Of a stretch of 64,000 nucleotides of DNA, positions 7,126-11,684 are shown piece after piece. Source of the DNA: Blastocladiella emersonii ATCC 22665 (Eukaryota; Fungi; Blastocladiomycota). The notes under the pieces were generated by a model that worked only from the letters and a program-made list of their open reading frames with translations, made no database searches and was not told the origin of the DNA. The translations under genes and the position numbers were made by a program. The stretch's first letter is position 1. Each line of letters starts with the position of its first letter. The stretch is from positions 1,798,001 to 1,862,000 of the forward strand of contig JANHCV010000002.1 of NCBI GenBank assembly GCA_025594325.1, written 5' to 3'.

Positions 7126-10100
7126 TCACCCAAGCAGATCCGGTACATGCTTCGCGAGCAAGTCGCGCAGTACCGTCCGCTCGGGCCCGGCCGACTTGGG
7201 GGCAAAGTCAGCGAAGCAGCCCGTGGCCATGACCTCGTTGCGTCGCTCGTGGACCGAGTCGGCTGTGTACGCGACGATGGGCGGGACGGCGCGCTTCGCC
7301 GCCTCCGCGACGGCGTGGATCAGCAGCGCGGCCGTGACGCCGTCCATTTCGGGCATTTGGAGGTCCTACACGGCAGCGAACGGGACGGTTAGTCGTGAAC
7401 AGCGCGATGGACAAACTAGCAACGAGAGCGGGCGTACCATGAGCACGAGATCGACCGTCGGAGCGTCGCCCTGGAACACCTCGGAAAAGTACGCGACGGC
7501 CTCGGCGCCGCCGGGCATCTGGACCACGTCGCACCGCAGCAGGTCCAGCCGCTTCGACGTGACCGTGCGCACCACGCGGTTGTCCTCGACGACCATGACG
7601 CGCGGACGCGGGCGCGACTCGGCTTGCGGATCGAGCTGCGGCAGTTGCGCTGGTTGCGGCTGCGGCTGCGGCTGCGGCTGCGGGGTGGTGGTGATCAGGG
7701 CCATGGACGTAGAGGATGGCGGCTGCTCAGCGGCGGCAGCGGTAGCGGGCGTGGAGGTCGACGCAGGGACCGGTACAGGTTCGGCACCGACCACGGGCGG
7801 CGGTGCGTCGTTAAATGACGCGTCGAGAACAGTAACCCCGCCGTCCATCTCGAGCGCCGCGGGTGCCGGCGCCGGTGTAACAAGCGCGCGCGGCATCGGG
7901 ACGGGAGACGCCGCAGCAACGAGCAATCCGCACGCGGGAACCGCGAAACGGACCCGCCCGGGCCGGCGAGGTGCGACGCGGCCGGCGAGATCCGCGACGA
8001 GCCGGTCGACGACATCGAGCGCGAACGGCGACGTGAACTCGGCGCCGCGCGCGGCGTTGGTCGGGTCGAGGAGCGTGGCGACGTCGAGGTCGCGCGGGGT
8101 TGGGATGAGCGCGTCAGCTTCCTCGCCGTCATCGTCGAAGACGGGAAGCGCAGTGGGGAACACGGCGCGCACGTCGAGCCAGTCGTCGCGCTGCGCGAGG
8201 CTGATGCGGGCGGGCTCGCGGCCGCGCAGCGCGGACTCGTGGACCACGTCGACGATGCGCGCGAGGAGCCGCGCGAGGTCCGGCGTCGGTGCGAGCGCGG
8301 CGAGCTCGAGCCCGACGTCCACGTCGAGCCGCAGCCGTGCGCCGGCGGACCACCGAGCGCGCGCGCGGACCTCGGCGACGCGGCAGACCTGGTCGCGCAC
8401 CGGCTCCACCGCACCCTCGGGCGGCGGCGGCGCGACGCCGTGGAACAGGTACCGGACATCTGCCGCGAGCGTGGCGAGATGTTCCGCGGCGGCCCACGCG
8501 CCGCGCCACTCGGCGTCGTCGACGACGATGACGGCGGGCAGGTCGCACGGGCGGCGTGCCTCGATGTGGGCGAGAAGGCGCGCGGCGGGGTCGGCGAGGT
8601 GCGCACACCAGAGGCGCAGGAGGCTCTGCTGCTCGGCGAAGGCGCGTTTCGAGGCGCGGGCGAGCGCGGCGATCTGGGCCTCGGCGCGGCGCTTCTCGGT
8701 GGCGTCGGCGAACAGGAGGACCTGCGCGATGCCCGACGCCGCGGCGCCGTCGCGCGGGTCCGACGGGGTGCACACGAGCAGGTCGGCGGCAAACGAGGTT
8801 CCGTCGGGGCGCTTGATGGTCACGGCGCGCGCGGCGGCGGCGGCGGCGGGGCCGGCGGTGCCCTCGACGGGCGGCGACAGCGGCCCGCAGTCCTCGATCA
8901 CGGTGCGGACCCTATCACGAGCCTCGGGCCGGGTGAAGAGCGCCGTCGCGTTGGCGTTACACGCGAGGAGCTTCCCGTCGCGGTCTAGTGCGACGAGGTA
9001 GTCGGGTACGGCCTGGATACACGCGGAGGCGCGCTCGCGGAGTGCGGCGAGGCGGCGGTCGAACTCGAACCGCTGGCGCTTGACGTCGCCGGCCTCGTCG
9101 AGCTTGTGGACGGTGGCGAGGGCGAGGGCGGCGACGGGCGGGGCGAGCAGGGCGACGAGGGCGAGGACGACGTGCGACCAGTACTTGTAGACGGCGAGCG
9201 AGTATTTCGGGAGCGGCGCGCACACGACGGTCCAGGTGCGGTCGGCGGGGCGGACCGACGAGACGGCGGCGAGATCAGTCGCCTCGGCGCCCGACAGGTT
9301 GGTCCAGACGACGCGGCCGTCGGTGGCGTCGACAATGTGGTAGCCCATGGACGGCTCGAGCATGGACCGCTTGATGACCTCGGACGCGAAAAAGGACATG
9401 CCGACGAGCGCCGAGTTGGACAGGCCGTTCGGGAAGGCGACGGGCCCGCCGGCGCGCAGCCAGATGGAGATGCCGGCGCCGCCCGTAATGAAGTAGATGA
9501 CGGGCGACAGGTGCGGGATCCCGTCGGCGAGCGCGAGGGCGATGGTGGCGGCGCGTTCCGGGTTGCTCTGCGGGTCGAAGCCAAAGGGCGCCGAGGCGAC
9601 GAGGGTCGGGTTCTCGGGGTTGACGTTGCGCGCGACGTAGGTCAGGGTGCCCGGCCAGTACGTTTCGCGGCGGGCCGACGGGACCGACTGGCCGTTGACG
9701 AGGTCGAAGATGGTGGTGTTGGAGGCGGTCTCCCAGGCGGATCGCTACGCGGGGCGCGGGGTCGAGTAAGCGGACGGTGTGCGAATCAGCGCACAACGAG
9801 AGGGCCAGTCAGTACCTGCTGCTCGGGAATACCCTGGAAAATGACAATGGAGGTGAGCAGGGTCGAGTTGACGGTCGCCGTGTCGAGGTATTGGGCAAAG
9901 GTCGCGTTGGACATGGGCCGTGCCGAGGACGCAAAGGCGTCGAGGCCGTGCAGCTTGGACACGATCTCGCGGTTGATGACGAGGGCGACGCCCGAGGCGA
10001 GCGAGTTGCAGCTGAGGCGGACCTCGGCGGGCGACATGGCGGCGCGCAGCTCCTGGAAGATGAGCGTGGCGGCGCCGATGCACAGGGCAAAGGCGACGAG

Positions 10101-10772
10101 CGCCGCGAGCTGCGCGCGCAGCGACGCAGACCGGCACGGCGCGGTGAAGGCGGCGAGGCGCGAGCGCGGGCTGCCACCGCCCTTGCCCGACGACGAAGCC
10201 GAGTGTGCTGGTGGTGACGGCGGCGGCGGCGTCGGCAGGTTGTGCTCGAGCGAGAAGCGGTCAAACTTGTCGTCGTCATTGTTGGCATCGACATCGTCGC
10301 GCTCGCCGTGAGCCGCTGGCGGGACATGGTGGTGGCGGCGATGCAGCGAGGGTGACGGCGGGGTGGTGGGAGGCGGCGAGGGCAGGCACTGCTGCTGCTG
10401 CTGCTGCTGCTGCGCGGCGCCCGCCTCCTCGGCCACCTCGATATCGATGCTCACGGCGTCGCGGCGAGAGCGAGCCGCGCCAGGTGCGTGTGGCAGCAGC
10501 AGGAGGGCAGTCTCAGCGGCGGGCGCGCATGGTGGAGCGAGGTGCTCGGGGCGCGGCGACAGCGCGTCGCGCATGGCCTGCGCCAGCGTGAGCGGCGGCT
10601 GCTGCGTCTGCGACTCGGGCGGCGCGATACATGGCGACTGCGGTGGTGGCGGGGTCGTCGATGCATCGTGGCACGCGGCGTCGAGGAGGAGCGGGCACAG
10701 CGCGGGAGAGAGCGGCGAGACGGGCGATGGCGGGAGCGGCTCGCCCGGGCGCGCAGCGCGGCGGTGCGGCAT
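7126..10772 (-). CDS. Membrane sensor: TM-CHASE-like-TM-PAS-degenerate HisKA/HATPase-receiver (hybrid histidine-kinase-like, about 1167 aa); exons 10772-9816, 9744-7438, 7365-7126
   Basis: In-frame introns at 9815-9745 and 7437-7366. Two TM segments flank a CHASE-like region (GFDPQSNPERAATIALA). PAS: IQAVPDYLVALDRDGKLLACNANA...IKRPDGTSF. Receiver: VMVVEDN...VLMDLQMPEMDG...IVAYTAD...FAPK. Confidence 0.8.
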
Positions 10773-10847: not shown

Positions 10848-11480
10848 CGTTGCGCCGAGTCGCGCTGGGCGATGCGCGCGGAACGGCGGAGAAGGTTCGG
10901 GGTCGGGGCCGCCGTGAGCGTGGCCGTTGGCAGGGGGCGGGTGGCTGGCTGGTCGCGCGCCGCCCGTGCGTGTGCGTGAGCGTGGGTCGGCGTGAGGGGT
11001 TGGGATGCGTGACAGCCGAGAGACAGGCGGGCAGGCGAGCAGGCAGGCGACGGACACGACCGAGCGTGAGGCGGGAGCCGCCAGCGGGAGGGAGGGGCGC
11101 GGGGAGAGGACGGGCCGCGCGAGCGTGCGCGGCAGGCGGTCCGATTTCGCGCTGGCGGTGCCGTGTGCGCCGCGCCGCGGAGCGCAATCGGCGAGGCGGG
11201 CGCCGCGTCGCCGGCCATCGCGCCCGCCGCGCCGAGTTGCGTGTTGCCGTGGGACGGGCGCGCGGTCGGCGAGAGCGTTGGCCGCGGCGGCGCGGTCGCG
11301 AGCGCGGGCGACCCAAAGGTCGGCGCCCTCGATTTGCGCCAGGCCTTGCCGCCTCGCCACTCGCGCCCGCAGCTGCTTGTCCCACGCCCGCCGCATCCGA
11401 TGATCCCCGCTCGTGGGCCTCGATCACCGCGTCCCCGTTGCGCCTCACGTTGCGCCGAGTCGCGCTGGGCGATGCGCGCG
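10848..11480. repeat. 33-bp perfect direct repeat (10848-10880 and 11448-11480), 600 bp apart
   Basis: CGTTGCGCCGAGTCGCGCTGGGCGATGCGCGCG is present twice in the divergent intergenic region. Confidence 0.88.
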
Positions 11481-11684
11481 CGAGTACACACATGGAGCCG
11501 TGCCGCTCGTTGCCAAGGTGGTTTGGAGTATACGATCCGAGCGTGGAGAGTGAAAGCTCTTCAGAGCGGTGCGCCACGTTCACGGGGAAAAGGGAAAAGG
11601 GCCAACAACGCTTGCATGTTTTACCTGTCCAACCAGCAGAGCCCCGCACTACCGTGCGCCCTCCCTCTCCAAAAACGTAGCAAC

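What the first reader, a model, noticed from the sequence alone, without database searches (positions are those of the whole stretch)
7126..10772. CHASE-PAS hybrid histidine kinase with a dead transmitter but an intact receiver
Seen: the H-box region reads WCAHLADPAARLL versus the canonical SHELRTPL, so aligning on the Pro puts Ala at the phospho-His. The N-box reads DLARLLARIVDVVHES with no Asn, and the G2 box reads FTSPFALDVVDRLVADLAGRV without GxGLGL. The receiver keeps ED, the phospho-Asp (LMDLQMPEMDG), T and K. Established: CHASE-containing hybrid kinases resembling plant cytokinin receptors occur in early-diverging fungi. Inference: a pseudokinase sensor that signals conformationally or is phosphorylated in trans on its receiver, reminiscent of degenerate subfamily II ethylene receptors.
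Basis: partly seen in the sequence, partly recalled or inferred. Interest (0 to 1): 0.72.

Follow-up and report, generated by a model that had tools for sequence, protein, structure and literature searches.

The report
Kinase-dead CHASE receptor with working receiver
This gene of the water fungus Blastocladiella emersonii encodes a membrane receptor built like a plant cytokinin sensor; its kinase module keeps its shape but has lost every catalytic residue while the phosphate-accepting receiver stays intact, so it is a new fungal example of a known trick, the pseudo-histidine kinase.

Summary
Window 10772-7126 (minus strand) is a three-exon gene. Its exon translations equal the public 1167-aa protein H9P43_002532 of Blastocladiella emersonii ATCC 22665.

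**Architecture:** low-complexity N-terminus, TM, CHASE, TM, PAS, DHp-like, CA-like, P/Q linker, receiver.

**Sensor:** the CHASE domain is sound. AF2 gives pLDDT 88.6, and the best fold match is the Arabidopsis AHK4 sensor.

**Transmitter:** it is homologous to DHp+CA (hhalign 99.5%, E 1.6e-22; best structural match DivL, Z 14). It has Ala700 at the phospho-His column, and no N-box Asn, G1 or G2.

**Receiver:** it passes Pfam's threshold and keeps E1039, D1040, D1089, T1122 and K1145.

**Relatives:** orthologues in Allomyces, Catenaria and a metagenome form one clade (96/94 support). They carry A, R and S at the His column, so the His was lost once and long ago. They are nested among His-bearing Blastocladiomycota CHASE-PAS relatives that themselves lack the N-box Asn.

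**Most likely function (inferred):** a ligand-gated pseudokinase whose receiver exchanges phosphate with Ypd1, or serves as a docking module.

The scan has already noted the same family at several other loci of this genome, including a cluster beside Ypd1. I found no paper describing it. It is a new variant of a known kind, of moderate interest.

The parts
9816..10772 (-). Exon 1 (aa 1-319): low-complexity cytoplasmic N-terminus with polyQ, TM1, and the first part of CHASE
   Evidence: identical to P0001 aa 1-319
9745..9815 (-). Intron 1, 71 nt, GT..AG, inside the CHASE domain
   Evidence: removing it gives P0001 exactly
7438..9744 (-). Exon 2 (aa 320-1088): rest of CHASE, TM2, PAS, DHp-like, CA-like, P/Q linker, and the first half of the receiver, in one uninterrupted reading frame
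7366..7437 (-). Intron 2, 72 nt, GTACG..CTAAC..TAG, lying exactly between the codons of M1088 and the phospho-Asp D1089. If retained it runs into an in-frame stop.
7126..7365 (-). Exon 3 (aa 1089-1167) plus stop: second half of the receiver
10047..10121 (-). TM1 (aa 218-242)
   Evidence: hydrophobic stretch; its C-terminal end is helical in the AF2 model, which starts at aa 225
9184..10046 (-). CHASE ectodomain (aa 243-506, spans intron 1)
   Evidence: Pfam CHASE 21.9 bits, below the cut-off. Family profile hits the AHK4 sensor 3t4j at E 2.3e-16. AF2 pLDDT 88.6; Foldseek best hit AHK4 3t4s at E 5e-13, TM 0.69, then PcrK.
9109..9183 (-). TM2 (aa 507-531)
8686..9069 (-). PAS domain (aa 545-672), ending in the family-invariant Q-V..D-x-T-E-K junction to the signalling helix
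   Evidence: Pfam PAS_4/PAS below cut-off. NCBIfam AtoS PAS region E 2.2e-5. Relatives pass the PAS cut-offs. V and D of the junction are invariant in A1.
8437..8685 (-). DHp-like helical hairpin (aa 673-755)
   Evidence: AF2 helices 13-61 and 75-100 of the model; hhalign against His-bearing relatives
8602..8604 (-). Codon of Ala700, the residue at the phospho-acceptor His column. His701 follows at +1.
7927..8436 (-). CA-like alpha/beta domain (aa 756-925) without N-box Asn, G1 or G2. N-box equivalent is at 8233-8280 and G2 equivalent at 7975-8046.
   Evidence: In one search, isolated CA domains of VraS, PhoQ and ETR1 match at Z about 11 with rmsd 2.9-3.7.
7603..7926 (-). Pro/Ala/Gln-rich linker (aa 926-1033) with a PQ repeat
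   Evidence: the part of this linker inside the model (aa 926-965) is mostly low-pLDDT
7183..7599 (-). Receiver domain (aa 1035-1149, spans intron 2) with E1039, D1040, D1089, T1122 and K1145
   Evidence: Pfam Response_reg E 1.3e-11, 45.1 bits. Best PDB relatives are the CKI1, SLN1 and AHK4 receivers. Alignment; residue positions.

Best explanation
Shown (confidence about 0.9):
- The gene encodes a membrane receptor: TM, CHASE, TM, PAS, pseudo-transmitter, receiver.
- The transmitter descends from a DHp+CA histidine-kinase module and keeps that fold.
- It has lost the phospho-His (Ala700), the E/DxxN/T phosphatase motif, the N-box Asn, G1 and G2. By sequence it should therefore be unable to autophosphorylate, to pass phosphate through a His, or to act as a HisKA-type phosphatase.
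- It belongs to one old Blastocladiomycota clade that lost the His once.

Inferred (confidence about 0.45):
- A ligand bound by the well-preserved CHASE ectodomain is transmitted through TM2, PAS and the conserved D-x-T-E-K signalling helix.
- This changes the pose of the dimeric pseudo-DHp/CA scaffold, which controls how accessible the C-terminal receiver is.
- The receiver, still chemically competent, takes phosphate in trans from the single fungal Hpt protein (Ypd1~P) and loses it by hydrolysis.
- The protein would thus work as a ligand-gated phosphate sink, or reverse-relay receptor, that sets the phosphorylation level of Ypd1 and its downstream regulators.
For: **Gene model and identity:**

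**No HisKA or HATPase_c signal:** none by Pfam, NCBIfam or PDB phmmer.

**Homology of aa 655-965 to the DHp-CA of relatives:**
- phmmer E 7e-56 to 7e-7 against 1.8 billion proteins.
- hhalign 99.5%, E 1.6e-22, 267 columns.
- The family profile hits solved kinases at 1e-15.

**Fold:**
- AF2 gives a helical hairpin plus an alpha/beta domain.
- All top Foldseek hits are kinase DHp-CA modules.
- VIA-align: DivL at Z 14.1 with 208 residues aligned; isolated CA domains at Z about 11.

**Motif states:**

**Clade:** the His-less group is monophyletic (96/94) and carries A, A, R, S at the His column.

**Receiver:**
- It passes Pfam's threshold.
- It keeps all five catalytic residues in all three full-length orthologues.
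- It is as conserved as PAS (34-40% identity), while DHp (22-26%) and CA (15-20%) drift.

**Sensor:** CHASE is sound. The D of the PAS-helix junction is invariant across the family.

**Leads only:**
- An earlier scan report says this genome has a Ypd1 gene next to kinase-dead CHASE receptors.
- Reversible Hpt-receiver transfer and the phosphatase mode of AHK4 are established knowledge, recalled rather than tested.
Against: - No expression data: no RNA run was listed.
- No biochemical test of any kind.
- The transmitter model is only middling (pLDDT 62.5, lid region below 50).
- In the Streptomyces hybrid pseudokinase PsmA the conserved receiver Asp is dispensable (PMC12963549). An intact receiver therefore does not prove phospho-signalling.
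- The residue after the receiver Lys is Ser, not the usual Pro (Gly in Catenaria).
- The phosphate donor (an active kinase plus Ypd1 in this genome) was not verified here.
Confidence: 0.5

Rival explanations
1. Phosphorylation-independent scaffold. The pseudo-transmitter and the receiver act only as ligand-controlled docking surfaces for other proteins, as in Streptomyces PsmA, Caulobacter DivL or plant ETR2/EIN4. The receiver Asp is never used.
For: PsmA is a hybrid pseudokinase with a variable residue at the His column among orthologues and a conserved but dispensable receiver Asp. The same pattern of a variable His column is seen here. The best structural match is DivL. A clade-specific motif G-A-E/S-F-x-S in the former ATP lid is conserved, which hints at a new binding surface.
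Against: All five receiver catalytic residues survive in three genera over a divergence that erased the H-box. That is easier to explain if the phosphorylation chemistry is still used.
Confidence: 0.25
2. Heterodimer partner. The protein pairs through its DHp-like hairpin with a His-bearing paralogue. One candidate is the sister-clade protein H9P43_006452, which keeps the His but has no receiver. Together they would rebuild a His-to-Asp path, or this protein would block its partner as RetS blocks GacS.
For: The sister clade is His-bearing and receiver-less, which is a complementary loss. RetS and GacS are among the fold and profile matches.
Against: The His-bearing relatives also lack the N-box Asn and mostly G1/G2, so no partner in this family obviously supplies ATP-driven phosphorylation. 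DHp identity to the paralogues is low (15-18%). No interaction data exist.
Confidence: 0.1
3. Decaying or non-functional gene: a relic of a hybrid kinase on its way to loss.
For: The DHp and CA regions evolve fastest. There are long low-complexity stretches. No RNA evidence could be obtained.
Against: The 1167-codon frame is intact with two canonical introns. Orthologues in Allomyces, Catenaria and a metagenome share the same architecture. CHASE folds confidently. PAS and receiver are conserved and the receiver residues are intact. The His was lost before these genera split, yet the gene persists.
Confidence: 0.07
4. Still an enzyme. It would be a non-canonical kinase using His701 (+1), another residue, or Ser/Thr kinase activity as reported for subfamily II ethylene receptors and phytochromes.
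For: His701 sits next to the canonical column. A His in helix 2 (H741) is conserved in the clade.
Against: His701 is Ala in Allomyces and Glu in Catenaria and the metagenome protein. Placing it on the His column would need two compensating indels between the fixed anchors C699, L702 and P705. H741 is also present in His-bearing relatives and is Tyr or Phe in others, so it looks structural. No N-box Asn, G1 or G2 is left to hold Mg-ATP.
Confidence: 0.05

Closest known systems
Fungal group XIX CHASE hybrid histidine kinases of early-diverging fungi (Herivaux 2017, PMC5285503; Kabbara 2019, PMC6324907)
   Same: TM-CHASE-TM sensor followed by a transmitter and a receiver. Occurs in the same phylum (Catenaria, Allomyces). 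My tree places this gene among fungal CHASE-PAS proteins of Blastocladiomycota and Gonapodya.
   Different: Those are described as kinases with HisKA and HATPase_c. Here both are undetectable by Pfam and all catalytic residues are gone. The Allomyces orthologue AMAG_13448 is not among the CHASE kinases listed in the passages I read.
Arabidopsis AHK4/CRE1 cytokinin receptor
   Same: Best structural and profile match of the sensor domain. Same overall order of sensor, transmitter and receiver. Its receivers are among the nearest solved relatives of this receiver.
   Different: AHK4 is an active kinase/phosphatase with intact H, N, G1, F and G2 boxes. Sensor identity is only about 17%, and the ligand here is unknown.
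Subfamily II ethylene receptors ETR2 and EIN4 of Arabidopsis
   Same: Eukaryotic membrane receptors with a degenerate histidine-kinase domain followed by a receiver. They signal without His autophosphorylation (established knowledge, recalled).
   Different: Different sensor (ethylene-binding TM domain plus GAF), different lineage, independent degeneration.
Streptomyces PsmA, a hybrid histidine pseudokinase (PMC12963549)
   Same: Hybrid kinase-like protein with PAS domains. The His column varies among orthologues, the ATP motifs are lost, the phosphatase motif is lost, and the receiver Asp is conserved.
   Different: Bacterial, cytoplasmic and polarisome-associated, with no CHASE sensor. Its receiver Asp was shown to be dispensable.
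Caulobacter DivL pseudokinase
   Same: Top structural match (Z 14.1). PAS plus DHp-CA with a non-His residue at the acceptor position. Works by conformational coupling to partners.
   Different: DivL has Tyr at the site, keeps an N-box Asn (alignment), and has no receiver or CHASE sensor.

Membership tests
Histidine kinase transmitter (HisKA + HATPase_c) | Phospho-acceptor His in the H-box | tested here: not met
   Ala700 at the His column, with anchors C699, L702 and P705 in register
Histidine kinase transmitter (HisKA + HATPase_c) | N-box Asn, G1 DxGxG and G2 GxGxG for Mg-ATP binding | tested here: not met
   No Asn in the N-box helix, no G1 glycines, and G2 replaced by T-S-(deletion)-P-F. 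No Pfam HATPase_c hit.
Histidine kinase transmitter (HisKA + HATPase_c) | Common descent and DHp + CA fold | tested here: met
   hhalign 99.5%, E 1.6e-22. Foldseek E 2.5e-8 and below, all hits kinases. VIA-align Z 11-14.
Histidine kinase transmitter (HisKA + HATPase_c) | Autophosphorylation activity | not testable with these tools
   Needs a gamma-32P-ATP assay
CHASE domain (PF03924) | Pfam score above the gathering cut-off | tested here: not met
   21.9 bits against a cut-off of 25, covering profile positions 4-112 only
CHASE domain (PF03924) | Homology and fold of solved CHASE sensors, flanked by two TM helices | tested here: met
   Family profile including this protein hits AHK4 at E 2.3e-16 and PcrK at 7.5e-11. 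AF2 pLDDT 88.6; Foldseek AHK4 at 5e-13, TM 0.69. Relatives pass the Pfam cut-off.
Response regulator receiver (PF00072) | Pfam score above cut-off and the catalytic set acidic pair, phospho-Asp, Thr/Ser, Lys | tested here: met
   45.1 bits against 30.2; E1039, D1040, D1089, T1122, K1145
PAS fold | Pfam score above cut-off | tested here: inconclusive
   PAS_4 scores 16-19 bits against 23.1. The homologous region of relatives passes (P0015 PAS_9 at 28.9, P0003 PAS at 24.9).
Cytokinin receptor (functional class) | Binds cytokinin through the CHASE pocket | not testable with these tools
   Only fold similarity was shown; about 17% identity to AHK4
Pseudo-histidine kinases (DivL, PsmA, ETR2/EIN4 type) | Kinase fold kept, acceptor His absent, state conserved among orthologues | tested here: met

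The most novel reading that the evidence does not exclude
Blastocladiomycota may have converted a whole cytokinin-receptor-like kinase family into ATP-independent receptors that work the phosphorelay backwards. Members keeping His and Asp would drain or shuttle phosphate from Ypd1. This older His-less, receiver-bearing clade would be a pure ligand-gated phosphate sink. It would be a eukaryotic receptor class whose output is removal, not supply, of phosphoryl groups.
Probability: 0.25. Interest if true: 0.7.

Novelty: new variant of a known kind. Interest (0 to 1): 0.45.

Why it matters
Two-component receptors of early-diverging fungi have been catalogued by searching for kinase domains, so proteins like this one are invisible to those surveys. 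It shows that a CHASE sensor of the cytokinin-receptor type can be kept for a long time on a transmitter that should no longer be able to phosphorylate anything, with only the receiver chemistry preserved. The His-bearing but ATP-site-less relatives add to the picture. Together they give a natural series for asking what a hybrid kinase does when it cannot be a kinase: phosphate sink, reverse relay or scaffold. The protein also offers a tractable target for finding the ligand of fungal CHASE domains.

Tried and rejected
**Searches that gave nothing useful**
- The word-index search with exon 2 found only the protein itself.
- The same tool with the family alignment was swamped by bacterial kinases and gave no fungal census.
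- Pfam and NCBIfam on single exons gave only sub-threshold hits, because two domains are split by introns.
- Single-sequence PDB searches of aa 240-520 and 530-985 found nothing.
- The four-member His-less profile alone hit no solved kinase. Homology to kinases therefore rests on the bridge through His-bearing relatives.
- Literature searches for the locus tags, and for Blastocladiella together with CHASE domain, gave nothing.

**Readings considered and rejected**
- His701 as a shifted acceptor: it is not conserved and would need two indels.
- His741 in helix 2 as acceptor: it is shared with His-bearing relatives and is Tyr or Phe elsewhere.
- A gene-model artefact hiding a real H-box: the whole PAS-to-receiver stretch is one open exon.

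**Claims I could not verify**
- The Ypd1 gene and the active kinases of this genome lie outside the window.

**Tree caveat**
- The tree used all alignment columns, including the single His column. P0003 was split into two halves and P0010 was cut to its first 1100 residues.
Full report
**Gene and identity**

The window is GC-rich (56-75%). ORF listing and three-frame translation of the minus strand, with the DNA at the two junctions, give a three-exon gene.

| Part | Window coordinates | Notes |
|---|---|---|
| Exon 1 | 10772-9816 | |
| Intron 1 | 9815-9745 | 71 nt |
| Exon 2 | 9744-7438 | |
| Intron 2 | 7437-7366 | 72 nt, GTACG..CTAAC..TAG |
| Exon 3 | 7365-7129 | stop at 7128-7126 |

A protein search with exon 2 returned a 1167-aa public protein at 100% identity. 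It is 'hypothetical protein H9P43_002532' of Blastocladiella emersonii ATCC 22665. A codon-by-codon check of the three exons against it gave no mismatch.

I used that database protein (P0001) by reference.

**Observation**

The receiver motif LMDLQMPEMDG exists only after splicing, because intron 2 lies exactly between M1088 and D1089.

Pfam on the whole protein:
- Response_reg at 45.1 bits (cut-off 30.2).
- CHASE at 21.9 bits (cut-off 25).
- PAS_4 at 16.2 bits (cut-off 23.1).
- No HisKA or HATPase_c.

PDB sequence searches see only the receiver. The best hits are the CKI1, SLN1 and AHK4 receivers. Nothing is found in aa 240-520 or 530-985.

**Relatives**

An exhaustive HMMER search with aa 230-985 found 42 proteins. 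The nearest are all Blastocladiomycota:
- Allomyces macrogynus AMAG_13448 (E 7e-56).
- Allomyces arbusculus proteins.
- A Catenaria anguillulae protein.
- A metagenome protein.
- Two B. emersonii paralogues.
- Proteins of Sorochytrium and Paraphysoderma.
- One Gonapodya (chytrid) protein.

Pfam on these relatives shows a gradient:
- Two have CHASE, HisKA, a partial HATPase_c and a receiver.
- Several have CHASE, PAS, HisKA and a receiver but no HATPase_c hit.
- The nearest relatives of the query have neither kinase domain.

**The transmitter is a degenerate DHp-CA module**

In the family alignment the H-box consensus is L-C-H-E-L-R-N-P. The four nearest sequences read as follows:

| Protein | H-box | Residue at the His column |
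|---|---|---|
| B. emersonii (this gene) | W-C-A-H-L-A-D-P | Ala |
| Allomyces | C-A-A-L-T-A-P | Ala |
| Catenaria | C-R-E-L-C-R-L | Arg |
| Metagenome | C-S-E-L-L-Q-P | Ser |

- **Homology:** a profile-profile comparison of these four against ten His-bearing sequences gives 99.5% probability, E 1.6e-22, over 267 columns, from the PAS junction to the G2 region.
- **Bridge to solved kinases:** the 13-sequence family profile hits solved kinases (ShkA 1e-15, GacS, a plant cytokinin-type kinase, HK853, RetS, DivL). The four-member profile alone hits none.
- **Fold:** an AlphaFold2 model of aa 655-965 (pLDDT 62.5, pTM 0.59) shows a long helical hairpin and an alpha/beta domain with a disordered lid. 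Foldseek returns only kinase DHp-CA modules (best 2.5e-8, about 300 columns). VIA-align gives DivL at Z 14.1 with 208 residues aligned, and isolated CA domains of VraS, PhoQ and ETR1 at Z about 11 with rmsd 2.9-3.7.
- **Missing motifs:** the N-box helix has no Asn. G1 has no glycines. The G2 glycine loop is replaced by T-S, a one-residue deletion, and P-F. The HisKA phosphatase motif (acidic at +1, Asn/Thr at +4) is also gone.

It was looked for and not found.

**Sensor and receiver are sound**

*Sensor*
- The family CHASE profile hits the AHK4 sensor (E 2.3e-16) and Xanthomonas PcrK.
- The AF2 model of aa 225-535 is confident (pLDDT 88.6, pTM 0.80).
- Its best fold matches are AHK4 (E 5e-13, TM 0.69) and PcrK.

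*Receiver*
- The receiver keeps E1039, D1040, D1089, T1122 and K1145. So do the Allomyces and Catenaria orthologues.

*Identity by domain among the orthologues*

| Domain | Identity |
|---|---|
| PAS | 38-40% |
| Receiver | 34-40% |
| CHASE | 24-31% (vs Allomyces, Catenaria and the metagenome protein) |
| DHp | 22-26% |
| CA | 15-20% |

The Asp of the PAS-to-helix D-x-T-E-K junction is invariant across the family. This argues that conformational coupling into the pseudo-transmitter is still selected.

**Evolution**

A maximum-likelihood tree (21 rows, 890 columns, LG+C20) makes the four His-less proteins one clade, with support 96/94. Its sister is a His-bearing, receiver-less clade that includes B. 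emersonii H9P43_006452 (100/98). Both are nested with two Sorochytrium His-plus-receiver proteins (98/96).

The His was therefore lost once, before Blastocladiella, Catenaria and Allomyces diverged. The position then drifted, the same pattern as in Streptomyces PsmA.

A second B. emersonii paralogue (H9P43_008896, two receivers) has Arg at the His column, while its Catenaria sister keeps His. That is an independent loss.

None of the aligned fungal relatives has the N-box Asn. In the most canonical one the alignment to GacS puts His there, and G1 reads D-T-S-H-G. Weak or absent ATP binding may therefore be a family trait.

**Earlier scan notes**

These are unchecked AI notes and serve as leads only.
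- They list several more CHASE-PAS dead-kinase loci in this genome.
- A follow-up report describes a cluster of such genes beside a Ypd1-type gene. It says those genes keep His and Asp but lack the ATP motifs.

This agrees with what I saw in relatives from other species. The cluster and Ypd1 themselves lie outside my window and were not checked.

**Mechanism**

Shown: the receptor is kinase-dead by sequence and keeps a chemically complete receiver.

Inferred: I commit to a ligand-gated receiver that exchanges phosphate with Ypd1, a sink or reverse relay, at about 0.45.

| Rival reading | Probability |
|---|---|
| Phosphorylation-independent scaffold of the PsmA/DivL/ETR2 type | 0.25 |
| Heterodimer partner of a His-bearing paralogue | 0.10 |
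| Decaying gene | 0.07 |
| Non-canonical kinase | 0.05 |

No RNA run was listed, so expression and the introns are not confirmed by reads.

**Comparison and novelty**

- CHASE hybrid kinases of early-diverging fungi are known (PMC5285503; group XIX in PMC6324907).
- Pseudo-histidine kinases are known in bacteria and plants.
- I found no paper on a His-less CHASE receptor with a receiver domain in fungi, and none naming these loci.

It is a new variant of a known kind. It is real and conserved, but not very surprising to a specialist. The scan has met the family repeatedly in this genome.

Noticed in passing
window 7366-7437: Intron 2 lies exactly between the codons of M1088 and the phospho-Asp D1089. 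It is 72 nt long and contains an in-frame TAG. If retained, it would yield a protein ending before the phospho-Asp, that is, without a working receiver.
   Followed up: no
P0010 (B. emersonii H9P43_008896, not in this window): A 2428-aa paralogue with two receivers has Arg at the phospho-His column, while its Catenaria sister P0025 keeps His. This is a second, independent loss of the His in the family.
   Followed up: partly
P0012 (Sorochytrium RI367_005144): This is the reciprocal degeneration. The H-box His is intact, but the receiver reads L-M-V-R-I-M-Q where relatives have L-M-D-L-x-M-P, so the phospho-Asp is gone. By locus tag it lies next to P0011 (RI367_005143), which is intact.
   Followed up: no
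P0003 (Allomyces arbusculus GGF31_002201): One 1536-aa model holds two complete CHASE-PAS-H-box modules in tandem. It is either a true fusion or two tandem genes merged by the annotation.
   Followed up: no
relatives P0008-P0018 (other Blastocladiomycota, Gonapodya): All aligned His-bearing relatives lack the N-box Asn (His, Tyr, Val, Leu or Ile instead), and most lack G1. Only two give a partial Pfam HATPase_c hit. The family as a whole may not bind ATP in the usual way.
   Followed up: partly
window 10389-10412 and 7651-7683: A run of eight Gln codons lies in the N-terminal cytoplasmic region, and a PQ dipeptide repeat lies in the linker before the receiver. The first 217 residues have no detectable domain.
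   Followed up: no
window about 10860-10900 and 11460-11500: The same short peptide-coding stretch (R-A-S-P-S-A-T-R-R-N in one frame) appears twice upstream of the start codon. It fits the 33-bp repeat another reader noted in this promoter region.
   Followed up: no
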